Below are positions 7,501 through 59,791 of a DNA stretch of 64,000 bases, one piece after another. Position 1 is the stretch's first letter; each line of letters starts with the position of its first letter. The stretch is from Macrostomum lignano. Its lineage: Eukaryota. The notes below the pieces were generated by a model. It did not search any database and was not told the origin of the DNA. It saw nothing but the letters and a program-made list of their open reading frames with translations. The position numbers and the translations under genes were made by a program. The stretch spans positions 186,001 to 250,000 of the forward strand of contig NIVC01001102.1 of assembly GCA_002269645.1 (NCBI GenBank), written 5' to 3'.

Positions 7501-9041
7501 GAAACCCACTAAAATCCTCATCAATAAATCCCATGGTAAATCCCATGAAACTCACTAAAATCCTCATCAATAAATCCCATGATAAATCCCATGAAACCCA
7601 CTAAAATCCTCATCAATAAATCCCATGATAAATCCCATGAAACCCACTAAAATCCTCATCAATAAATCCCATGGTAAATCCCATGAAACTCACTAAAATC
7701 CCCATTTGTCTGGCCTATTTGCAGACAAAGCAGGTAATGGGCGATGCCATGAAGGAGGCGGCCTTCTCCCTTGCCGAGGTGAAGTTCGCCACAGGTGACA
7801 ATATCAATCACACGGTGCTGCAGAATGTGTCCAGAGCCCAGATCAAGATCAAGACTAACAAGGACAACATAGCCGGAGTCACGCTGCCAATATTCGAGCC
7901 CTACGCTGATGGCGGCGACGCCTTCAACCTGACTGGACTGGCGCGAGGCGGGCAGCAGATCGCCACGCTGAAGAAGCACTACGCCAAAGCTGTTCGTCTG
8001 CTGGTTAAGCTGGCCTCTCTGCAGACTTCGTTTATCACTCTGGACGAAGTTATCAAGGTTTGATTGGTTGTCTTGATCGTGTGTTGGATATCACATGCTC
8101 CGCCAGATTCTCGGGTGGAATATGAGCTGATCTCCTCAGATCCTTAGATAAGATAATCCTTCCCAGATCCTCAGGTGGGATAATCTTCCCCAGATCCTCA
8201 AGTGGGATAATCTTTCCCAGATCCTTAGGTGAGATCACCATATCCTTAGGTGGGATAATCAGATCCTAAGGGGGATAATCAGATCCTCAGGTGGGAAAAT
8301 CACATTCTCAGTTGTGAGAATCAGATCCTCAGTTGGGATAATATTCTCAGGTGAGATAATCACCCTCAGATGGGATAATATTCTCAGTTGTGAGAATCAG
8401 ATCCTCAGTTGGGATAATATTCTCAGGTGAGATAATCACCCTCAGATGGGATAATATTCTCAGTTGTGAGAATCAGATCCTCAGTTGGGATAATATTCTC
8501 AGGTGAGATAATCACCCTCAGATGGGATAATATTCTCAGTTGTGAGAATCAGATCCTCAGTTGGGATAATATTCTCAGGTGAGAAAATCACCTTAGGAGG
8601 GATAATCATCCTCAGGTGGGATAATCACATATTCAGTTTGGATAATCACATATTCAGTTTGGATAATCAGATCTTCAGGTGGGATAATCATCTTCAGGTG
8701 GGATAATCACATCCTCCGGTGAACCAAAGCGGTAGTAACCAATCCCCAAAATAGACAGCTAGTCACACTCACACACACAAATCCAGGTGACCAACCGCCG
8801 TGTGAACGCCATCGAGCACGTGATCATCCCGCGCATCGAGAACACGCTGACTTACATCAGCCAGGAGTTGGACGAGCGCGAACGCGAAGAATTCTACCGA
8901 CTAAAAAAAGTGCAAGAGAAAAAGAAGAGGGACCGCGCCAAGAAGGAGGCCGAGGCCAAAGCCAAAGGAGCGGATTTGTTGGATGGCCCTGGCAGCCTGT
9001 TGGAGAAGGAAGTGGACCAGGACCTGCTGTTTAATGACTAG
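1531..9041 (+). CDS. ATP6V1D: V-type proton ATPase subunit D, 247 aa; exons 1531-1568, 6726-6843, 7725-8057, 8787-9041
   Basis: Spliced product [35 protein letters not shown]...[10 protein letters not shown]...[20 protein letters not shown]...[15 protein letters not shown]...DLLFND matches recalled family motifs. All introns are GT-AG with consistent phases (2,0,0); 744 nt total. Exon 1 is too short for the ORF track. Confidence 0.97.
1896..2584. mobile_element. Non-autonomous DNA transposon (MITE), ~690 bp, in ATP6V1D intron 1
   Basis: Perfect 23-bp TIR gcattcttttgtcttacaatgcc (1897-1919) / ggcattgtaagacaaaagaatgc (2561-2583); subterminal copies of ttacgatgccc/gggcatcgtaa; candidate 8-bp TSD gatttttc (1888-1895) / aatttttc (2585-2592). 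Confidence 0.8.
2640..6180 (-). mobile_element. Decayed DIRS/Ngaro-type tyrosine-recombinase retrotransposon in ATP6V1D intron 1
   Basis: Minus-strand order: gag (YDDEFR...W...[18 protein letters not shown]), RT start (W..L......MKEGFNI), RNase H ([18 protein letters not shown]), integrase N-terminal region ([12 protein letters not shown]), YR remnant ([11 protein letters not shown]). Many stops and frameshifts. A short aaaccagttcatt motif recurs near both ends. Confidence 0.85.
6930..7705. repeat. Minisatellite in ATP6V1D intron 2 (cccatgaaacccactaaaatcctcatcaataaat-type)
   Basis: Visible tandem copies up to ~20 nt before the exon-3 acceptor. Confidence 0.9.
8110..8725. repeat. Minisatellite cagatcctcaggtgggataat in ATP6V1D intron 3
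   Basis: Tandem copies; reverse complement of the 9.6-10.5 kb array. Confidence 0.9.
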
Positions 9042-13213: not shown

Positions 13214-16777
<3,564 letters not shown>

Positions 16778-18081: not shown

Positions 18082-44403
<26,322 letters not shown>

Positions 44404-45819: not shown

Positions 45820-47780
45820 GGTATCTAAGGATTCAGTGAGGGAAATACTGGGTGCCGGGTGGGATTCAGTATTGGGAATACTGGTTGGGGGATGTGATTC
45901 AGTGTGGGAAACACTGGATGGGGGGTGTGATTCAGTGTGGGGAATACTGGGTGCCGGGTGGGATTCAGTGAGGGGAATACTGGATGGGGGATGGGATTCA
46001 GTGTTGGGAATACTGGTTGGGGGATGTGATTCAGTGTTGGGAATACTGGTTGGGGGATGTGATTCAGTGTGGGAAACACTGGATGGGGGATGTGATTCAG
46101 TGTTGGGAATACTGGGTGGGGGTGGGATTCAGTGTTGGGAATACTGGTTGGGGGATGTGATTCAGTGTGGGAAACACTGGATGGGGGATGTGATTCAGTG
46201 TTGGGAATACTGGGTGGGGGATGTGATTCAGTGTGGGAAACACTGGATGGGGGATGTGATTCAGTGTGGGGAATACTGGGTGGGGGATGTGATTCAGTGT
46301 TGGGAATACTGGATGGGGGATGTGATTCAGTGTGGGAAACACTGGATGGGGGATGTGATTCAGTGTGGGGAATACTGGGTGGGGGTGGGATTCAGTGTGG
46401 GAAACACTGGATGGGGGATGGGATTCAGTGTGGGAAACACTGGGTGGGGGTGGGATTCAGTGTGGGAAACACTGGATGGGGGATGTGATTCAGTGTGGGA
46501 AACACTGGATGGGGGATGTGATTCAGTGTGGGAAACACTGGATGGGGGATGTGATTCAGTGTGGGGAATACTGGGTGGGGGTGGGATTCAGTGTGGGAAA
46601 CACTGGATGGGGGATGTGATTCAGTGTGGGAAACACTGGATGGGGGATGTGATTCAGTGTGGGAAACACTGGATGGGGGATGTGATTCAGTGTGGGAAAC
46701 ACTGGATGGGGGATGTGATTCAGTGTTGGGAATACTGGGTGGGGGATGTGATTCAGTGTGGGAAACACTGGATGGGGGATGTGATTCAGTGTGGGAAACA
46801 CTGGATGGGGGATGTGATTCAGTGTGGGAAACACTGGATGGGGGATGTGATTCAGTGTGGGAAACACTGGATGGGGGATGTGATTCAGTGTGGGAAACAC
46901 TGGATGGGGGATGTGATTCAGTGTGGGAAACACTGGATGGGGGATGTGATTCAGTGTTGGGAATACTGGGTGGGGGTGTGATTCAGTGTGGGAAACACTG
47001 GATGGGGGATGTGATTCAGTGTGGGGAATACTGGGTGGGGGTGGGATTCAGTGTGGGAAACACTGGATGGGGGATGTGATTCAGTGTGGGGAATACTGGG
47101 TGCCGGGTGGGATTCAGTGAGGGGAATACTGGATGGGGGATGGGATTCAGTGTGGGGAACACTGGATGGGGGATGTGATTCAGTGTGGGGAATACTGGGT
47201 GGGGGTGGGATTCAGTGTGGGGAATACAGGATGGGGGATGGGATTCAGTGTGGTGAATACTGGGTGCCGGGTGGGATTCAGTGAGGGGAATACTGGATGG
47301 GGGATGGGATTCAGTGTTGGGAATACTGGGTGGGGGTGGGATTCAGTGTGGGGAATACAGGATGGGGGATGGGATTCAGTGTGGTGAATACTGGGTGCCG
47401 GGTGGGATTCAGTGAGGGGAATACTGGATGGGGGATGGGATTCAGTGTTGGGAATACTGGGTGGGGGTGGGATTCAGTGTGGGGAATACAGGATGGGGGA
47501 TGGGATTCAGTGTGGTGAATACTGGATGGGGGATGGGATTCAATGTGGTGAATACTGGATGGGGCATGGGATTCAGTGTGGTGAATACTGGATGGGGGAT
47601 GCAATTCAGTGTGGGGAATATTGGTTTGGGGATGGCCGGGGATTCAGTGTGGGGAATACTGGGTGGGGGATGGGATTCAATGTGGGGAATTCTGGGTGGG
47701 GGATGGGATTTAGTGTGGGAATTCTGGGTGGGGGATGGGATTAGTGTGGGGAATTCTGGTTGGGGGATGGGATTCAGTGC
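45820..47780. repeat. 33-bp G-rich minisatellite gattcagtgtgggaaacactggatgggggatgt
   Basis: Direct; explains the CDSVWETLDGG ORFs. Confidence 0.97.
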
Positions 47781-48276
47781 GGGAAGCTGCATGTATCGGA
47801 ACTATTTCAACCTCTCTGACTTTACAAAGATTTCTCTAACGCGTCAGTAAATTTACATGTTTATATCAGATGTGCAAATTACTCGCTGCCTGTGTTTATT
47901 ATTTTATTTTCCCTGTTCAACGTAAACAGTTTAGATACCACACCATCAGATGCAGATCCAAGCGCTGATCCAAGGAATTTTATTCATTTCCGACCGACAA
48001 GTGGACTCTATATAATTAATCAATTATTTTGTACTGCACAGCCGACGGAATCCTTATCAGAAGCTTTTGGGGTTACGCACTGACTGCAATCTGTCAAATA
48101 CGTTTATGCGCATTTTGCCAACCATGGACACCCACGCGGGGTTCAAAAAGCTGAAATGCTAGGGGATTTGCACAAGCAGTCACCGACTTGCGATTCGGTT
48201 CTAGGAAAAATTCTACTTTAAATGTAAATGTAAGTTCAAAGTAGCACATTTTCTGCTGCTGGTAAAATGTCAGAAG

Positions 48277-50700: not shown

Positions 50701-52054
50701 TTTTATTATCTCTCCTTTGATCTCCAATCTCTGTAGAATCTAATCTCTTTCAAATCTTGTCTCTCTCAAATCTAATCTCTATCAAATCTTATCTCTTTGA
50801 AATCTAATATACTCAAATCTGATCTCTCTCTAATCTAATCTCTCTCGAGTCTGATCTCTTTTAAATCTAGAATCTGTCTCGAATCTCTTAATTTCTCTCT
50901 AATTTAATTTTGAAATCTCGTATATATCCACAATTAAGATTTAAAATCTCTCCAATCTCTGAGCGTATCTGCCTCGGCTGTTTGGTTCCCGGCATCCGCG
51001 AAGATCTGCTACGTCGCTGCGGGCTTGTTTGGGCTGCCTCTCTTTCCGTGAAGGAGGCCAGGACTGCCCGACTGCCAGAGGGCGGCATTAATTGTTCCAG
51101 GCGGTGGTCGAGACCTGGACGCTGACTGACTTACACGTAGAACAACAACTGTTGTTCTTGTTTTTTGTTATTATTCTTATTATTGTTGTTATTATTGTTT
51201 TTTGTTGTTGCTTTTATTGTTGTCGTTGTTGTTGCTATTATTGTTGTTGTTTTTGCTGCTGCTGCTGGCACTACTGGTACTAATCCATCCCATTTGCTTC
51301 AGTCTTTGCAAGTCAAACACAGCATCATAGTTAATATCGGGATAAATTCTCGCGCTTGTGCAAGCAGCATCAAAATTGTCAAAAGAAAAACAGGAACATG
51401 TGTATCTGCTATTACTCAACTGTCAAACCAGAACACCCCAAAGTGCTGCCTGTCGCACGCCAAACAGATCGACTGCTCGCTTCTTGCAAAAGAAAGCTGA
51501 CAGAAATGCAGATCTGTCCCAGATTTCAATCGAGAATTTCTGCAAAAGCAAAACATCTGCTTGCTGCTTGTTGCTTTTCCAACCCATTCCGAAGTTGCAA
51601 CACGCGTTCCTGAGCTGATAGCAGAAATCGACAAAAAGCTTCATTGTATTCAGAACTGCCTGACTGACACCCCTGAGGAGCTGGTATTGCCTGCCTTCCA
51701 TCTGGACTCCTCCGCCTCCGTCTCTGCTTTTTCATCCCAATAATTCGATTGAGGAGGTGGGAAAGTGGAACAGAGAGACAGAGAGATGGAGGGGATGCAG
51801 TTTAAGGTGGGCTACAGATTTAAGTGTCGAGGGTTGGCCATCCCGAACATTGCAGCATGCGGTTTCACTGGGAATGCGAGAGGAAGTGCTTGAGTGGCTC
51901 TCCGGACCCCCTGCCTGTAAGCGACCCCCTGCAGCGTGGCCTAAGTTAATGATAGAGCAAAGCTTCTCAAGACCCCGGAGAGCCACTCGTTGACTATTGA
52001 GCATCCACGGGTATGACGAATGAACGGATTGAGCAATATTGTCTTGCGATAGTT

Positions 52055-52891
<837 letters not shown>

Positions 52892-52967
52892 TTCATAAGG
52901 CAGTTTGAAACTGCAAACCACGCACTCGGAAGATATTGAAGGTTACCAGTTGTCGAATGTTCGAAAA

Positions 52968-53008
52968 AAACCGATATTTCGGCCCAGACTGGGCCTTCGT
53001 CAGGGTTT
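52968..53008 (-). ncRNA. Minimal type-I hammerhead ribozyme (copy 1)
   Basis: Minus strand: AAACC-CUGACGA-A-GGCCCAG U CUGGGCC-GAA-AUAU-C/GGUUU. Stem I AAACC:GGUUU, core CUGANGA and GAAA, stem II hairpin, palindromic AUAU in place of stem III. Confidence 0.85.
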
Positions 53009-53402
53009 ATTTATTCGGGTTTAAAAACAAATATATTGGCAGTGAAGTTATTGTAACATAATTTCAATATATATATATGCTACTTTTGGGGGTGCACTGA
53101 GCAGTGTTGAGTAAAGATGTGTACGTATAATTAGTTAAAAACGTGAGTTGAAGCACGCTGATTGGTTAAAGATTGGCAGCTTAAAGCCTTGCACAAAAAA
53201 TATTAAAGATGTTAGGTGCTATAGAAAAACAGATTTAGAGCGTAGAAGTGTATGAATAAGCATCTTGAAAAGTTCAACAAATAAGTTATTTACGCCCGTA
53301 GAATTGAGAACAAATATTAAATTAAAACAGAGCACTGAGAACTTTTCAAAAAGAAGTGCAAGTAAATAGATGTTATTACATAAACAGTAAATAAATTGAG
53401 TC

Positions 53403-54310
53403 GCCAGGCAGGCCACTAGTTGCAGTTGGCGGCGTCTGGTCACAGATCGCCGCCTGCACAGCCCCTGGTCACAGGCGACTGGGCACTGCAGATCAGTTGA
53501 GGCTAGATTATCAGTAGTAGTAGCACTAGTAGTTGCAGTAGTAGCTCGTAGTAGTAGTAATGGAAGTAGTAGTAGTACAAGTATTAGTAGAGTAGTAGTA
53601 GAGCAGTCGTAGGCGTAGTCGTAGTAGAGACGTACTGGTAAGCAGTTATTTGAAGTAGCCAGGCAGGCCACTAGTCGCAGTTGGCGGCGTCTGGTCACAG
53701 ATCGCCGCCTGCACAGCCCCTGGTCACAGGCGACTGGGCACTGCAGATCAGTTGAGGCTAGATTATCAGTAGTAGTAGCACTAGTAGTTGCAGTAGTAGC
53801 TCGTAGTAGTAGTAATGGAAGTAGTAGTAGTACAAGTATTAGTAGAGTAGTAGTAGAGCAGTCGTAGGCGTAGTCGTAGTAGAGACGTACTGGTAAGCAG
53901 TTATTTGAAGTAGCCAGGCAGGCCACTAGTCGCAGTTGGCGGCGTCTGGTCACAGATCGCCGCCTGCACAGCCCCTGGTCACAGGCGACTGGGCACTGCA
54001 GATCAGTTGAGGCTAGATTATCAGTAGTAGTAGCACTAGTAGTTGCAGTAGTAGCTCGTAGTAGTAGTAATGGAAGTAGTAGTAGTACAAGTATTAGTAG
54101 AGTAGTAGTAGAGCAGTCGTAGGCGTAGTCGTAGTAGAGACGTACTGGTAAGCAGTTATTTGAAGTAGCCAGGCAGGCCACTAGTCGCAGTTGGCGGCGT
54201 CTGGTCACAGATCGCCGCCTGCACAGCCCCTGGTCACAGGCGACTGGGCACTGCGGATCAGTTGAAGCTAGATTTTCAGTAGTAGTAGCACTAGTAGTTG
54301 CAGTAGTAGT
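53403..54310. repeat. 255-bp tandem unit x3 plus a partial fourth, inside the hammerhead element
   Basis: gccaggcaggccactagt starts at 53403, 53658, 53913 and 54168. Each unit has a GC-rich hairpin half and a (GTA)n-rich half. Confidence 0.95.
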
Positions 54311-54588
54311 AGTAGTGGTAGTAGAGTAGTAGTAGTACAGTCGTAGTCGTAGCCGTAGTCGTAGTAGTGTCGTGCGTCTTAAATATTCAGCTGCAGAAAT
54401 AGTACTCTTGCTTATCCCAAGTAGATTTTTGGCGGAGAATAGCTCGTATACGAAGATATTTTGTTGACAAACATGGCGAGCCTCAATAATAGTCCGGTCC
54501 TGGGTACAGATATTCATAAGGCAGTTTGAAACTGCAAACCACGCACTCGGAAGATATTGAAGGTTACCAGTTGTCGAATGTTCGAAAA

Positions 54589-54629
54589 AAACCGATATTT
54601 CGGCCCAGACTGGGCCTTCGTCAGGGTTT
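54589..54629 (-). ncRNA. Minimal type-I hammerhead ribozyme (copy 2)
   Basis: Same sequence as 52968-53008, in the second direct repeat. Confidence 0.85.
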
Positions 54630-55004
54630 ATTTATTCGGGTTTAAAAACAAATATATTGGCAGTGAAGTTATTGTAACATAATTTCAATATATATATATG
54701 CTACTTTTGGGGGTGCACTGAGCAGTGTTGAGTAAAGATGTGTACGTATAATTAGTTAAAAACGTGAGTTGAAGCACGCTGATTGGTTAAAGATTGGCAG
54801 CTTAAAGCCTTGCACAAAAAATATTAAAGATGTTAGGTGCTATAGAAAAACAGATTTAGAGCGTAGAAGTGTATGAATAAGCATCTTGAAAAGTTCAACA
54901 AATAAGTTATTTACGCCCGTAGAATTGAGAACAAATATTAAATTAAAACAGAGCACTGAGAACTTTTCAAAAAGAAGTGCAAGTAAATAGATGTTATTAC
55001 ATAA

Positions 55005-55905
<901 letters not shown>

Positions 55906-56167
55906 TAAATATAAAGAGACGCACAGACACAGACTAAAAGTTAGAGTATGTATGTGCAAACATTGTCAAACACTGTCGTTACTTTACTTGTATTGTTATT
56001 GTTAGATTATATAGATTAATATAGAATAATATCACTGATTGACAGGTCAGTCAGTACAAGCAAGCGAATGTCCCTGCGTACGCTGGATTTTACGAGCTAG
56101 AATAAAGATTTCGGATATTTTAGAAACGTTCCAATCATACTACTGACTCCACTCGGCTAGTAAGTAG

Positions 56168-59100
56168 TCACACACGCATAGCCATCAGCTGGTCCAAATG
56201 CAGGTCCTCCTGGTCGCGGATGAACAGCTCCTTGGTGAGCAGCATCTGGTGGCCCTCGAAGCTTTTCAGACGCGTCTCGATGTGTCCCAGCTGGGATCCG
56301 ATGGACAGCCGATGAACCACGTGCTCTCCGCAGATGTCTTCGCAGACTCTTGGGAAGCACTCGTGCACATTGGCTATGGCTGTGTTCACCATGCGGCTGA
56401 TCATGGAGGGCGGCAACAGGCTGCTCACGCTGAGGTCAGAATCGCACCGCAGCAGGTCGTACAGGAGCTGACAGAGACTGCTGGTGTCTAAACAGCCTTT
56501 TTGATTGTGTGCGTTTGTTTGTGGGCATCAATTTTACTTACACCTGTCTCATGACTGGCTCTTGGCTTTGCAATTAGCTAAGACACCTGGGGTAGATAGC
56601 TGAGACACCTGGGATAGATGTAAAGACACCTGGGATAGATGGTAGAGACAAACGGGGTAGATAGTGGACACCTGGGGTAGATAGTAGACAACTGGGGTAG
56701 ATAGTGGACACCTGGGGTAGATAGTAGACAACTGGGGTAGATAGTGGACACCTGGGGTAGATAGTAGACAACTGGGGTAGATAGTGGACACCTGGGGTAG
56801 ATGGTAGAGACACCTGGGGTAGATGTAGACACCTGGGGTAGATAGTAAAGACACCTGGGATAGATAGTAAAGACACCTGGGGTATATGGTAGAGACACCT
56901 GGGATAGATAGCAGAGACACCTGGGGTAGATGGTAGACACCTGGGGTAGATGGTAGAGACCTGGGGTAGATTGTAGACACCTGGGGTAGATGTAAAGACA
57001 CCTGGAGTAGATAGTAAAGACACCTGGGGTATATGGTAGAGACACCCGGGGTAGTTAGTGGACACCTGGGGTAGATGGTAGAGACACCTGGGGTAGATAT
57101 AGACACCTGGGGTAGATAGTAAATACCTGGGTTAGATTGTAAAGTCACCTGGGGTAGATGGTAAAGACACATGGGGAAGATAGTAGACACCTGGGGTAGA
57201 TAGTAAAGACACCTGGGATAGATAGTAGATACCTGGGTTAGATGGTAAAGTCACCTGGGGTAGATAATAGACACTAAGGGTAAATGAAAGAGACACCTGG
57301 GGTAGATGGATAGATAGTAGAGACACCTGGGGTAGACACCTGATAAGACACCTGTGAAAACACAGATAAGAGACCTGTGAAAACACAGATGAGACACCTG
57401 TGAAATCACGGATGAGATACCTGGTGACCTTGCACAGAAGATCGGTACCGCAGAGTGATAGATCGACACTATTTCACACATGATAGTATGATGGTACGTG
57501 AGCTGGGGAATGACATGCTGTACTCGATAAGACTACACTTGTAGCGACAGGACTACGACTCGTAAAACGTGACGAGCCAGCTCACCAGTCTCCTTGAGAT
57601 CGAAGCAGTTGTACAGAGCTAGCAGCTTCTGCATCTGTGCTACATCCCTGGGACAGGTAACTCCGGTAAAATAGCACATATCCGGTAGAGACTTGACCAG
57701 GTGCATCTGAGGACACCCGATACAGTTGGAAAATGTCAGCGACAGGCTCTTAACAAACGCAGTGAAGCTGAGCTGCTCCCGATTCCAGAACAGCATCCGG
57801 TAGATGTACTTTTTCAGTGGATTTCCCGCCAGCAAGGAGCTGTGACTTTCCAAGTCGTTCTGCGATGGGAATTCAGACGCATTTAAATGTAGGAGTAAAT
57901 ATGTAAGATTGGACGGAGCAGTTGCCGCTGTTCGACAAATTAAACGCCTGACTGTTAGATGCATCACCAACGTGTTAGACACAGCACCCAAACCTGTTAG
58001 ACACAGCACCCAAACCTGTTAGACACAGCACCCAGCCTGTTAGATACAGTACCCAACCTGTTTGACACAGCATACAACCTGTTAGACACAGCACCCAACC
58101 TGTTAGACACGGAACCCAACCTGTTAGACACAACCCAACCTGTTAGACACGGAACCCAACCTGTTAGACACAGCACACAACCTGTTAGACACAACCCAAC
58201 CTGTTAGACACGGAACCCAACCTGTTAGACACAGCACGCAACCTGTTAGATACAGCATCCAATCTGTTAGACACAGCACCTGATCTGTCAGACACAGCAC
58301 CCAGCCTGTTAGATACAGCATCCAATCTGTTAGACACAGCACCTGATCTGTCAGACACAGCACCCAGCCTGTCAGACACAGTACACAACCTGTCAGACAC
58401 AGCACCCAACCTGTTAGACACAGCACACAACCTGTTAGACACAGCACACAACCTGTTAGACACAGCAACCAACCTGTTAAACACAGCACCCAACCTGTTA
58501 GACACAGCAACCAACCTGCTAGACACAGCAACCAACCTGTTAGACACAGCACCCAACCTGTTAGACACAGCACCCAACCTGTTTGACACAGCATACAACC
58601 TGTTAGACACAGCACCCAACCTGTTAGACACGGAACCCAACCTGTTAGACACAACCCAACCTGTTAGACACGGAACCCAACCTGTTAGACACAGCACACA
58701 ACCTGTTAGACACAGCACGCAACCTGTTAGATACAGCATCCAATCTGTTAGACACAGCACCTGATCTGTCAGACACAGCACCCAGCCTGTTAGATACAGC
58801 ATCCAATCTGTTAGACACAGCACCTGATCTGTCAGACGCAGCACCCAGTCTGTCAGACACAGCACACAACCTGTCAGACACAGCACCCAACCTGTTAGAC
58901 ACAGCACACAACCTGTTAGACACAGCACACAACCTGTTAGACACAGCAACCAACCTGGTAAACACAGCACCCAACCTGTTAGACACAGCACCCAACCTGC
59001 TAGACACAGCACGCAACCTGTTAGACACAGCACCCAACCTGTCAGACACAGCACCCAACCTGTTAGACACAGCACACAACCTGTTAGACACAGCAACCAA

Positions 59101-59791
59101 CCTGGTAAACACAGCACCCAACCTGTTAGACACAGCAACCAACCTGTTAGACACAGCACACAACCTGTCAGACACAGCACCCAACCTGTTAGACACAGCA
59201 CACAACCTGTTAGACACAGCACACAACCTGTTAGACACAGCAACCAACCTGGTAAACACAGCACCTAACCTGTTAGACACAGCACCCAACCTGCTAGACA
59301 CAGCAACCAACCTGTTAGACACAGCACCCAACCTGTTAGACACAGCACCCAACCTGCTAGACACAGCACCCAACCTGTTAGACACAGCACCTGATCTGTA
59401 AGACTCGGGTTTAACAAATCACGCCTCTTTGGTTACGTATGGTTAAGTAAAGCCACGCACTCACCACGGTAAGAAACGCTCTCTCAGAGTCGTTAACCAA
59501 CAGTTGAAACTGTTTGTACAGTCGAGTGATCTGACTCTCATCGAGCAAACAGCTAGATTTGAGCTCCTCCATATCCTCCTTCGGTACCTTGACTCGCATA
59601 GTCAAATGTCGCCACCAGAGTTTGAAGATGAATTTCAGATGTCCAAACACGGTTGTGCTGGGTCGGTAGTCAAATTCGCCGCCAGTTTTATCTACAGCGG
59701 CAATCGTAGCCCCTGTCGCCGACTCAGCAGACATTCCAGGTGCTGTCAGCGCGGACACCAGAATCGGTTTGCTATCTTGTTCTTCAGTCAT
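56168..59791 (-). CDS. Divergent calcineurin B homologous protein (CHP)-like EF-hand protein, ~309 aa; exons 59791-59465, 57859-57586, 56496-56168
   Basis: EDMEELKSSCLLDESQITRLYKQF matches CHP EELEEIKKETGFSHSQITRLYSRF; NPL motif; LSFTAFVKSL; KL..YNCFDLKETG|CLDTSSLCQLL (EF3 position); C-terminal LDQLMAMRV* parallels CHP VEQKMSIRFLH*. Phases 0,1. The exon-3 acceptor was chosen from EF-hand register (an alternative AG lies 9 nt downstream). Confidence 0.85.
56580..57400. repeat. ~21-23-bp minisatellite gacacctggggtagatagtaga (CHP-like intron 2)
   Basis: Direct. Confidence 0.92.
57970..59395. repeat. 21-bp minisatellite gttagacacagcacccaacct (CHP-like intron 1)
   Basis: Direct. Confidence 0.95.

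What the first reader, a model, noticed from the sequence alone, without database searches (positions are those of the whole stretch)
52973..54593. Predicted 1621-nt self-excised, possibly circular RNA
Cleavage after the C of AUAUC falls between 54594/54593 and between 52973/52972. A minus-strand transcript spanning both repeats would release exactly one unit length (1621 nt) with 5'-OH and 2',3'-cyclic-phosphate ends. Those ends suit RtcB-type ligation, as established for retrozyme circRNAs. Production of the circle here is inference.
Basis: inference. Interest (0 to 1): 0.75.

Follow-up and report, generated by a model that had tools for sequence, protein, structure and literature searches.

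The report
Flatworm hammerhead retroelement, circle unproven
The 1621-base interval is one repeat unit of a young, non-coding mobile element of the flatworm Macrostomum lignano that carries a minimal hammerhead ribozyme in each unit and always lands in (ATCT)n microsatellites. Release of a 1.6-kb RNA circle is plausible but not shown.

Summary
Two 501-nt repeats, 100% identical and 1621 nt apart on the minus strand, each carry the same hammerhead motif. The predicted cuts at 54594/54593 and 52973/52972 delimit exactly 1621 nt. A purpose-built descriptor finds only these two copies and none in 300 shuffles.

It is not an LTR element. It is a 1.31-unit head-to-tail insertion (pseudo-LTRs) of a very young Macrostomum lignano family. 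I fetched five independent insertions, of 1.2 to about 7 units. All lie inside (ATCT)n in one orientation. All four visible 3' ends are the same, 86 nt past the ribozyme cut. The five 5' ends all differ. That is the signature of target-primed reverse transcription.

The ribozyme is the minimal type-I hammerhead described for Penelope-like elements (PLEs): no helix III hairpin, an extra base after A9, and no Rfam hit. That class cuts poorly, and only as a dimer or with protein.

The insertions need an RNA template with an intact cut site, so either a religated circle or an uncleaved multimer. The circle therefore stays an inference (about 0.35). Junction reads cannot test it, because the genome holds the same junction. 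I rate this a new member of a known kind, of moderate interest.

The parts
52887..55008 (-). The whole insertion: 2122 nt, or 1.31 head-to-tail units of a 1621-nt element, embedded in an (ATCT)n microsatellite.
   Evidence: Sister insertions have the same architecture.
54508..55008 (-). Upstream pseudo-LTR. It is the 5'-truncated extra 0.31 unit and carries hammerhead copy 1.
   Evidence: 501/501 identical to 52887-53387. No TG..CA termini, and no primer-binding site after it.
52887..53387 (-). Downstream pseudo-LTR. It is the 3' end of the full unit and carries hammerhead copy 2 and the fixed 3' terminus.
54589..54629 (-). Minimal type-I hammerhead, copy 1. Helix I 5' strand AAACC 54629-54625; CUGACGA 54624-54618; extra A 54617; helix II GGCCCA/UGGGCC 54616-54602 with loop GUC; GAA 54601-54599; palindrome AUAU (15.1-16.1) 54598-54595; C17 54594; helix I 3' strand GGUUU 54593-54589.
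   Evidence: Sequence; MFE fold gives helices I and II; descriptor scan; features match the PLE min-HHR description.
52968..53008 (-). Minimal type-I hammerhead, copy 2. Identical to copy 1, with C17 at 52973.
52973..54593 (-). The predicted unit-length RNA (1621 nt) between the two cleavage sites.
   Evidence: Circular fold: -385.6 kcal/mol, 48% paired, z = -2.5.
53399..54339 (.). Internal 255-nt minisatellite, 3.7 copies. Its copy number sets the unit length in the family (1365, 1621 or 1876 nt).
52887..52894 (-). GAAUAUCU, the fixed 3' terminus of the element and the inferred start site of reverse transcription. It lies 86 nt downstream of the hammerhead cut and shares UAUCU with the target repeat.
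   Evidence: The same junction ...CCTTATGAATATCT|ATCTATCT is seen in the window, L002, L004 and L005. The unit holds 20 ATCT and 3 AATATCT sites, yet only this one is used.
52048..52886 (.). Target microsatellite, 3' flank of the element ((GATA)n on the + strand, (ATCT)n on the element strand).
55009..55911 (.). Target microsatellite, 5' flank of the element.
53219..54517 (-). 432-codon ORF on the ribozyme strand. It starts 77 nt after the cut site and runs through the 255-nt (85-codon) repeats. It is probably not coding.
   Evidence: No Pfam family reaches its threshold. Intact in only 3 of the 7 units compared. Relatives are annotated only as hypothetical proteins of M. lignano.
54631..54797 (-). 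Candidate Pol II signals in the pseudo-LTR, upstream of the hammerhead: CCAAT at 54797-54793 and AACCAATCAG around 54786-54782; a TATA-like (TA)n at 54700-54687; AATAAA at 54636-54631 inside the helix I 5' flank. These are inferences from the sequence only.
   Evidence: Read directly. Not tested.

Best explanation
The interval is one unit of a 1.31-unit, head-to-tail insertion of a very young, non-autonomous retroelement family of Macrostomum lignano. The family has the hallmarks of Penelope-like elements (PLEs) and of their derivatives, the animal non-LTR retrozymes. These hallmarks are pseudo-LTRs that arise from copying more than one unit, one minimal type-I hammerhead per unit, a fixed 3' end, variable 5' truncation, and integration into a microsatellite, here strictly (ATCT)n.

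Shown: the element architecture, the hammerhead motif, the family, its target, and its end structure.

Inferred mechanism: (1) A sense (window minus-strand) transcript covers at least two units. It could start from the pseudo-LTR, which has CCAAT and TATA-like motifs, or come from read-through. (2) Two hammerheads pair through their palindromic AUAU to form a double hammerhead and cut after C17, releasing a 1621-nt RNA with 5'-OH and 2',3'-cyclic phosphate ends. (3) RtcB closes it into a circle, which then holds a single, inactive ribozyme. (4) A PLE-type reverse transcriptase/endonuclease supplied in trans nicks (ATCT)n and starts cDNA synthesis at the internal site GAAUAUCU, 86 nt past the cut site. 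It then copies through the intact or religated cut site for more than one turn. This recreates the tandem ribozymes needed for the next round.

My estimates: that it is a hammerhead-bearing, target-primed, PLE-like non-autonomous retroelement, about 0.85. That a PLE enzyme mobilises it, about 0.6. That steps 2-3 really yield a 1621-nt circle in vivo at a useful level, about 0.35. The confidence given for this entry (0.6) is for the statement as a whole, with the circle marked as inferred.
For: Species: the element ORF is 100% and 97% identical to two hypothetical proteins of M. lignano.

Five independent insertions were read: the window, L002, L003, L004 and L005. All lie inside (ATCT)n with the ribozyme strand on the ATCT strand. 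The four visible 3' junctions are identical, at unit position 86, although the unit has 20 ATCT sites. The five 5' ends differ (element positions 1, 251, 815, 1060 and 1309), with 0-2 nt of microhomology or a 7-nt filler. Insertion lengths are 1.2, 1.3, 3.7, at least 4.1 and 6.9 units, and each holds at least two hammerheads.

Units are more than 99.5% identical and the window's two pseudo-LTRs are 501/501 identical, so the family is recent.

[quoted passage not shown] It is not a chance motif.

The literature supports each comparison. Partial tandems, pseudo-LTRs, microsatellite bias and non-autonomous derivatives are described for PLEs (PMC8557442). Internal initiation of reverse transcription downstream of the hammerhead is shown for a PLE (PMC11167929). 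Animal retrozymes have been proposed to be PLE derivatives (bioRxiv 10.64898/2026.07.22.740005).

Sense-strand transcripts at sister loci follow from the RNA-seq-guided gene models, one of which is a host gene spliced into the array.

Every insertion contains uninterrupted AUAUC|GGUUU junctions upstream of its 3' end. The template therefore had an intact or religated cut site, which a circle explains.
Against: No reverse transcriptase or GIY-YIG endonuclease is present in any DNA I hold, so the partner enzyme is not identified.

I have no RNA data for this locus.

Min-HHRs were inactive as monomers and weak as dimers in vitro. In the PLE called PAc, cleavage needed the PLE protein, ribozyme mutants still inserted, and no RNA-seq reads ended at the cut site.

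The nearest-neighbour energy of the double-hammerhead fold (-25.2 kcal/mol) is far above the dimer MFE (-48.3). The 4-bp A-U helix III costs energy in this model.

The circle would be only 48% paired, unlike known retrozyme circles.

Units within one array differ in 255-nt copy number (1876/1365/1618 in L002; one unit of 1876 among units of 1620-1621 in L005). Simple rolling-circle copying of one circle does not predict this.

There is an ascertainment bias: sister loci were found through the internal ORF, so copies shorter than one unit would have been missed.

All copies are near-identical, so covariation cannot be tested.
Confidence: 0.6

Rival explanations
1. Same element, but no circle. 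The hammerhead rarely or never cuts on its own. The transposition template is an uncleaved multi-unit or read-through linear RNA, and reverse transcription starts at the internal GAAUAUCU site. The motif serves as part of the RNA fold that the reverse transcriptase recognises, or cuts only within the protein complex.
For: PAc shows this behaviour: protein-dependent cleavage, catalytic mutants that still insert, unprocessed RNA as the main substrate, and no RNA-seq ends at the cut site. Min-HHRs have low in vitro activity. The double-hammerhead fold is unfavourable. Arrays of up to 7 units exist that could give long multimeric RNA. Units within one array differ in length.
Against: It does not explain how the first copy longer than one unit arises from a shorter source. 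It does not explain why a complete catalytic core with a G10.1-C11.1 pair and a palindromic helix III is kept. Animal retrozymes with type-I hammerheads do give abundant circles.
Confidence: 0.4
2. A plant-type LTR retrozyme or solo LTR retrotransposon derivative: true LTRs, tRNA-primed reverse transcription and integrase-mediated insertion.
For: Two identical direct repeats of about 500 nt flank a non-coding core, with a hammerhead in each repeat.
Against: The hammerhead is type I and minimal, not type III. The repeats do not end in TG...CA. The sequence after the 5' repeat (GTACCCAGGACCGG) is not a tRNA primer-binding site, and there is no polypurine tract before the 3' repeat. Sister copies are arrays of 3.7 to 7 units with variable 5' ends and one fixed 3' end, which integrase cannot produce.
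Confidence: 0.02
3. A 1.6-kb satellite that spread and expanded only by DNA-level processes (unequal crossing-over, or reintegration of circular DNA) within (ATCT)n tracts. The hammerhead would be an inert relic.
For: Arrays vary in copy number and in 255-nt repeat number. L004 holds two copies with an identical 5' junction, most simply a DNA duplication. The genome is extremely rich in tandem repeats.
Against: Unlinked loci have different 5' ends but the same 3' end and the same orientation relative to the microsatellite, with fillers or microhomology at the 5' junctions. These are marks of target-primed reverse transcription, not of recombination.
Confidence: 0.05
4. The locus is a protein-coding gene (the 432-aa ORF) and the ribozyme-like motif lies in its untranslated regions.
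For: A 432-codon ORF lies on the ribozyme strand, while antisense open stretches are at most 79 codons. GenBank carries four hypothetical proteins derived from the family.
Against: No Pfam family reaches its threshold. The sequence is low-complexity and the ORF runs through TAC/ACT/CTA microsatellite that has no stop codon in any sense frame. The frame is broken in 4 of the 7 units compared. No homologues exist outside the family among 5.8 billion clusters.
Confidence: 0.05

Closest known systems
Minimal hammerheads (min-HHR) in the pseudo-LTRs of metazoan Penelope-like elements, for example Cercyon of Schistosoma mansoni (Cervera and de la Pena 2014, PMC4209133)
   Same: Type-I topology with no helix III hairpin and only a palindromic 15.1-16.1 tetranucleotide. 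An extra nucleotide between A9 and G10.1. A G10.1-C11.1 pair. A long helix II (6 bp) and a short helix I (5 bp) with an ill-defined loop 1. Located in direct flanking repeats of a retroelement. The host is also a flatworm.
   Different: No reverse transcriptase/endonuclease ORF lies between the repeats. The family is homogeneous (over 99.5% identical), whereas high heterogeneity is reported for min-HHRs in most genomes. Catalysis is untested here.
Animal non-LTR retrozymes (Cervera and de la Pena 2020, PMC7229834; Li et al. 2026 preprint, 10.64898/2026.07.22.740005)
   Same: Non-autonomous. Head-to-tail tandem units, each with one type-I hammerhead. GC below 50% (44.5% here). No primer-binding site or polypurine tract. 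Proposed mobilisation by PLE enzymes. A predicted unit-length RNA with ends that RtcB can ligate.
   Different: The unit is 1621 nt, against 150-450 nt typically and 51-972 nt for vertebrate consensus sequences. The hammerhead is minimal rather than canonical, with no loop-loop contacts. The predicted circle is only 48% paired. Targeting of (ATCT)n is strict, with a fixed 3' end 86 nt past the cut site. No circle has been demonstrated.
Poseidon PAc of Anolis carolinensis, the one PLE reconstituted in vitro (Frangieh et al. 2024, PMC11167929)
   Same: Tandem organisation. The hammerhead lies a short distance upstream of an internal start site for reverse transcription. The start codon of the ORF lies near the hammerhead.
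   Different: PAc is autonomous. Its target preference is AT-rich DNA rather than a specific microsatellite. Its start site is not homologous to the target, whereas here 5 nt (UAUCU) match the target repeat.
Non-autonomous PLE derivatives and microsatellite-biased PLEs: MRC1 and Chlamys at (CA)n and (C)n, Naiad at (TA)n (Craig et al. 2021, PMC8557442)
   Same: Pseudo-LTRs and multi-copy head-to-tail insertions of non-autonomous elements. Strong insertion bias for microsatellites, which hides target-site duplications.
   Different: Those clades mostly lack canonical hammerheads. The target repeat differs. No inverted 5' copy and no 30-40 bp tail was seen here.
Plant LTR retrozymes (Cervera et al. 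2016, PMC4918200)
   Same: Two hammerheads in direct repeats flank a non-coding core. The model of a circular RNA intermediate is the same.
   Different: Those have type III hammerheads, true LTRs, a primer-binding site, a polypurine tract, 4-bp target duplications and high GC. None of these is present here.

Membership tests
Hammerhead ribozyme, minimal type-I class of PLEs | Catalytic core C3-U4-G5-A6-N7-G8-A9 ... G12-A13-A14 ... U16.1-H17 | tested here: met
   CUGACGA ... GAA ... U-C, twice.
Hammerhead ribozyme, minimal type-I class of PLEs | Helix I and helix II flank the core, with a G10.1-C11.1 pair closing helix II | tested here: met
   Helix I is AAACC/GGUUU (5 bp). Helix II is GGCCCA/UGGGCC (6 bp), starting with G-C. 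Both form in the MFE fold.
Hammerhead ribozyme, minimal type-I class of PLEs | No helix III hairpin of its own; palindromic 15.1-16.1, so that two copies form helix III together | tested here: met
   AUAU lies directly between GAA and C17. The dimer fold can be drawn, but it is not favoured energetically: -25.2 against -48.3 kcal/mol.
Hammerhead ribozyme, minimal type-I class of PLEs | [quoted passage not shown] | tested here: met
   A at 54617 and 52996. This feature is listed in PMC4209133.
Hammerhead ribozyme (any class) | Match to a curated Rfam hammerhead covariance model | tested here: not met
   No hammerhead hit at the gathering score or at E<=10. This is plausibly because the motif has no helix III hairpin; I did not inspect the Rfam models.
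Hammerhead ribozyme (any class) | Covariation that supports the helices | tested here: inconclusive
   All 21 copies read are identical, except for two single-base deletions in homopolymer runs of helix II.
Hammerhead ribozyme (any class) | Site-specific self-cleavage | not testable with these tools
   Needs in vitro transcription or end-specific RNA sequencing.
Animal non-LTR retrozyme | Head-to-tail tandem units, each with one type-I hammerhead; no LTR, primer-binding site or polypurine tract | tested here: met
   Arrays of 1.2-6.9 units. No primer-binding site, polypurine tract or TG..CA termini.
Animal non-LTR retrozyme | Small unit (about 150-450 nt; up to 972 nt in vertebrate consensus sequences) | tested here: not met
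   Units are 1365, 1621 or 1876 nt, against the ranges.
Animal non-LTR retrozyme | Canonical hammerhead with loop 1-loop 2 contacts and efficient cleavage | tested here: not met
   The motif is the minimal variant and no recognisable loop-loop motif is present. Activity is untested.
Animal non-LTR retrozyme | Expressed as a highly self-paired circular RNA | tested here: inconclusive
   The predicted circle is 48% paired with z = -2.5. Expression and circularity cannot be tested here.
Penelope-like element (autonomous) | An ORF encoding a reverse transcriptase and a GIY-YIG endonuclease | tested here: not met
   The only ORF has no reverse transcriptase or endonuclease domain. No YxDD or GIY-YIG patterns occur in the window or the loci.
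PLE-type insertion (autonomous or not) | Partial tandem giving pseudo-LTRs, frequent 5' truncation, a hammerhead in the pseudo-LTR, and microsatellite bias | tested here: met
   compared with the description.
PLE-type insertion (autonomous or not) | An adjacent inverted 5'-truncated copy and/or a 30-40 bp tail | tested here: not met
   No inverted copy in the window or the loci. The 5' junctions show only 0-2 nt of microhomology or a 7-nt filler.
PLE-type insertion (autonomous or not) | The 3' region is shared with an autonomous PLE of the same genome | not tested
   No searchable copy of the M. lignano genome was available.
Plant LTR retrozyme | Type III hammerheads in true LTRs, a primer-binding site, a polypurine tract and a 4-bp target duplication | tested here: not met
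   Type I topology. No primer-binding site or polypurine tract. A target duplication cannot be determined inside a microsatellite.

The most novel reading that the evidence does not exclude
Two minimal hammerheads of a tandem transcript pair with each other and excise a 1.6-kb RNA, and RtcB closes it. A telomerase-related PLE reverse transcriptase then uses this circle as a rolling-circle template, primed by (AGAT)n DNA ends at one fixed internal site through UAUCU pairing. The dimer-only ribozyme and the copying of more than one unit would then form a self-sustaining cycle. This would be the first case in which the circular-template model of PLE and retrozyme mobilisation, proposed in 2014, could be read from insertion structure and tested in a transgenic-capable animal. 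It would also be the largest ribozyme-made circular RNA of an animal genome.
Probability: 0.25. Interest if true: 0.7.

Novelty: new member of a known kind. Interest (0 to 1): 0.4.

Why it matters
What hammerheads do in Penelope-like elements is still open. The only biochemical study found them dispensable for insertion (PMC11167929).

This family is useful for that question for several reasons. It is young, so its ends are unblurred. It has one strict target and one fixed start point for reverse transcription, 86 nt past the ribozyme cut. Every copy read spans more than one unit. The template must therefore have carried an intact or religated cut site.

The host, M. lignano, is a laboratory flatworm with transgenesis and public RNA-seq data. 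A marked copy, ribozyme point mutants and RNase R northern blots could decide between a circular and a linear template.

I found no paper in the searched library that describes hammerhead elements in this species.

For genome annotation, the finding also shows that four GenBank hypothetical proteins of this species are read from a retroelement.

Tried and rejected
- Rfam, at the gathering score on the whole window and at E<=10 on 52400-55200, gave no hammerhead. The only hits were two weak mir-34 matches on the opposite strand (E = 3.6), which I take as chance.
- My first fixed-spacing pattern miscounted the gap and found nothing. The variable-gap core pattern alone is no better than chance. 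I therefore wrote a full descriptor.
- Pfam on the 432-aa ORF gave nothing above threshold.
- A homologue search with the ORF returned only copies of the family itself. This was nevertheless the route to the sister loci.
- A covariation test was impossible because all units are near-identical.
- A regex scan for reverse transcriptase (YxDD) and GIY-YIG motifs in the six frames of the window and the loci found none.
- A relaxed min-HHR scan of all loci found no second ribozyme family.
- An exact-pattern scan of metagenome contigs for the ribozyme gave 0 hits.
- The supplement of PMC4209133 is not held, so I could not align against published min-HHR sequences.
- Literature searches for Macrostomum with hammerhead or with Penelope found nothing relevant.
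The result could not have been restricted to this species.
- Rejected readings: LTR retrozyme, pure satellite, coding gene and chance motif (see the rival explanations).
Full report
**1. The observation**

Read on the minus strand, the window contains the following twice: AAACC-CUGACGA-A-GGCCCA-GUC-UGGGCC-GAA-AUAU-C followed by GGUUUUUUU. The C that would be hammerhead position 17 is at 54594 in one copy and at 52973 in the other. The stretch 54593..52973 is exactly 1621 nt.

The two motifs lie in direct repeats of 501 nt (54508-55008 and 52887-53387). These repeats are identical at every position.

The bare core pattern is no rarer than chance in this window: 6 found against 5.9 expected. A descriptor for the whole motif behaves differently. 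It requires helix I, the core, helix II closed by G-C, GAAA, a palindromic 15.2/16.2 pair and U-H. It matches only these two sites and gave no hit in 300 dinucleotide shuffles of the 64-kb window on both strands.

No Rfam hammerhead model detects it, even at E<=10.

**2. What kind of hammerhead**

The motif has no helix III hairpin of its own. Between GAA and C17 there are only four bases, AUAU, which are self-complementary. It also has an unpaired A between A9 and G10.1, a G10.1-C11.1 pair, a 6-bp helix II and a 5-bp helix I that runs into an irregular extension.

This is the feature list that Cervera and de la Pena (2014, PMC4209133) give for the minimal hammerheads in the pseudo-LTRs of metazoan Penelope-like elements (PLEs), including those of the flatworm Schistosoma mansoni.

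The same paper reports no cleavage by single copies and only low cleavage by dimers or trimers. In the one PLE reconstituted in vitro (PAc, PMC11167929), three results bear on this. The hammerhead cut only when the PLE protein was present. Catalytic mutants still inserted. No public RNA-seq reads began or ended at the cut site.

My own energy evaluation agrees that the active form is not favoured. The double-hammerhead pairing scores -25.2 kcal/mol. Two separate monomers score -35.8, and the dimer MFE, an extended rod without a hammerhead core, scores -48.3. Nearest-neighbour models ignore the tertiary structure of the core, so this argues only against easy cleavage, not against any cleavage.

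**3. What the repeats are**

The 432-codon ORF on the ribozyme strand (53219-54517) has no Pfam domain. It did identify the organism and the family. It is 100% and 97% identical to two hypothetical proteins of Macrostomum lignano, and two more sit in the same 90% cluster.

I fetched the DNA around these four gene models from assembly GCA_002269645.1. This showed the same element at four other loci whose flanks beyond the microsatellite do not match the window:

- L002: about 3.7 units, interrupted by an unrelated transposon.
- L003: at least 4.1 units, running into an assembly gap.
- L004: two copies of about 1.2 units with an identical 5' junction. I count these as one event that was later duplicated.
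- L005: about 6.9 units with 7 hammerheads.

The window copy is 1.31 units. The "LTRs" are therefore pseudo-LTRs, the overlap produced when more than one unit is copied head to tail.

Consistent with this, the repeat does not end in TG...CA. The sequence after the upstream repeat is not a tRNA primer-binding site, and there is no polypurine tract before the downstream repeat.

**4. How it inserts**

All five independent insertions lie inside long (ATCT)n microsatellites, with the ribozyme strand on the ATCT strand.

The four 3' junctions that can be seen are identical...CCTTATGAATATCT followed by ATCTATCT. This is unit position 86, which is 86 nt downstream of the hammerhead cut. The unit contains 20 ATCT and 3 AATATCT sites, yet only this one is used.

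The five 5' ends are all different (element positions 1, 251, 815, 1060 and 1309). They join the microsatellite with 0-2 nt of microhomology or a 7-nt filler. In L005 about 390 nt of unrelated DNA lie in between.

A fixed 3' end, variable 5' truncation and a fixed orientation relative to the target are the marks of target-primed reverse transcription. The 5 nt (UAUCU) shared between the RNA and the target suggest that the nicked (AGAT)n strand anneals there. The choice of one site among many points to recognition by the enzyme rather than annealing alone.

The published record on PLEs contains each of these traits. Partial tandems, frequent 5' truncation, hammerheads in pseudo-LTRs, microsatellite bias that hides target duplications, and non-autonomous derivatives that make pseudo-LTRs are all described (PMC8557442). 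Reverse transcription that starts at an internal RNA site downstream of the hammerhead is shown for PAc (PMC11167929). [quoted passage not shown]

I found no reverse transcriptase or GIY-YIG endonuclease in the window or in any locus. The partner enzyme is therefore inferred, not identified.

**5. Does a 1621-nt circle form?**

*For.* A sense transcript that covers both hammerheads has what the published model requires. The two ribozymes are identical and can pair through AUAU. The product would carry 5'-OH and 2',3'-cyclic phosphate ends, which RtcB ligates efficiently in animal retrozymes (PMC7229834).

Sense-strand RNA of the family exists at sister loci. The GenBank gene models of this assembly derive from an RNA-seq-guided transcriptome (PMC5730564). 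All four models lie on the ribozyme strand, and one is a host gene whose last exon is spliced into the array.

The pseudo-LTR carries CCAAT and TATA-like motifs 60-170 nt upstream of the hammerhead. This is sequence reading only.

The strongest structural argument is this. Every insertion ends 86 nt past a cut site and continues upstream through one to seven uninterrupted AUAUC|GGUUU junctions. A linear, ribozyme-cut monomer could yield only an 86-nt cDNA from that start site. The template was therefore either a religated circle or an uncleaved multimer. A circle would also explain why every copy is longer than one unit, and why a dimer-only ribozyme can persist.

*Against.* The ribozyme class is a poor cutter. 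The circle would be only 48% base-paired (z = -2.5), unlike the highly paired retrozyme circles. It would be far larger than the 170-400 nt circles demonstrated so far, and larger than the 51-972 nt unit range reported for vertebrates.

Units within one array differ by whole 255-nt repeats. Copying a single circle does not predict this, although later unequal exchange could produce it. The sister loci were found through the internal ORF, so shorter copies would have been missed.

I put the probability that a circle is really made at about 0.35, and the uncleaved-multimer alternative at about 0.4.

The "junction" is contiguous genomic sequence in every tandem copy. RNase R northern blots, 2D gels or end-specific libraries are needed.

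**6. Comparison and novelty**

The element works like an animal non-LTR retrozyme or a non-autonomous PLE.

- It meets the architectural tests for a PLE-type insertion and the motif tests for a PLE min-HHR.
- It fails the autonomous-PLE test, having no reverse transcriptase or endonuclease.
- It fails the plant LTR-retrozyme tests.
- It fails three descriptive features of the animal retrozymes described so far: small unit, canonical hammerhead, and highly paired RNA.

I found no paper describing hammerhead elements in M. lignano. I rate it a new member of a known kind. Its unusual traits are the 1.6-kb unit (swollen by a 255-nt minisatellite), the strict (ATCT)n targeting, one fixed start site for reverse transcription, and near-zero divergence. 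Together these make it a convenient system for the open question of what PLE hammerheads are for.

**7. Verdict**

- Observation: confirmed.
- Interpretation: partly supported.
- Interest: 0.4.
- Most novel reading not excluded: a circular RNA as the rolling-circle template of a microsatellite-specific PLE derivative. Probability 0.25, interest 0.7 if true.

Noticed in passing
window 53219-54517 (-); L002 6001-6822; L003 10001-16085: A 432-codon ORF on the ribozyme strand starts 77 nt after the cut site and stays open through the 85-codon repeats. GenBank lists four hypothetical proteins read from this family: PAA94865.1, PAA86640.1, PAA62220.1 and PAA55498.1. One (P0002) is a host gene whose last exon is spliced into the first unit of an array. 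The ORF is broken in 4 of the 7 units compared.
   Followed up: partly
L002 3514-4740: An unrelated element of about 1.2 kb with terminal inverted repeats (CAGTGTTGGGC...GCCCAACACTG) and an 8-bp target duplication (CTTACCAG) is inserted in one unit of the array. It is most likely a non-autonomous DNA transposon.
   Followed up: no
window 53030-53073 and 54651-54694 (+): A weak Rfam mir-34 match (16.8 bits against a gathering score of 53.4; E = 3.6) lies on the strand opposite the ribozyme in each pseudo-LTR. It contains the GGCAGUG seed. Probably chance.
   Followed up: no
window 54631-54636, 54687-54700, 54782-54797 (-): An AATAAA hexamer lies inside the 5' flank of helix I, just upstream of the hammerhead core. 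A (TA)n TATA-like run and two CCAAT boxes lie further upstream in the pseudo-LTR. These are possible promoter and poly(A) signals that would compete or cooperate with the ribozyme.
   Followed up: no
window 13722-14526: A second (CTAT)n microsatellite of about 800 bp carries no element. It is a candidate empty target and shows that such tracts exist independently of the element.
   Followed up: partly
window, whole (63 TRF rows, for example 23304-25360, 45830-47783, 57952-59391): The window is extraordinarily dense in minisatellites with periods of 16-46 nt and in 4-nt microsatellites. These produce most of the long ORFs, which are therefore spurious.
   Followed up: no
window 7671-8063 (+); 39104-39541 and 43140-43796 (+): These are host gene fragments: a V-type ATPase subunit D exon (Pfam ATP-synt_D, E = 1e-25) and two APCDD1-like exons (Pfam APCDDC). 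The element lies about 9 kb downstream of the latter, on the opposite strand.
   Followed up: no
L005 6056-6448: About 390 nt of unrelated, non-repetitive sequence lie between the upstream (ATCT)n tract and the 5' end of the 6.9-unit array. It could be a 5' filler or transduced sequence, or a separate insertion.
   Followed up: no
L004 9760-11340 and 12064-13899: Two copies of about 1.2 units are separated by 730 bp of (ATCT)n. They share the same 5' junction and an A-to-G change, but differ by one 255-nt repeat. This is either a DNA-level duplication of insertion plus microsatellite, or an assembly artefact.
   Followed up: partly
L003 19535 and L005 17617: Two hammerhead copies each lack one base in a CCC or GGG run of helix II. 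Homopolymer errors in the long-read assembly and real mutations cannot be told apart.
   Followed up: no
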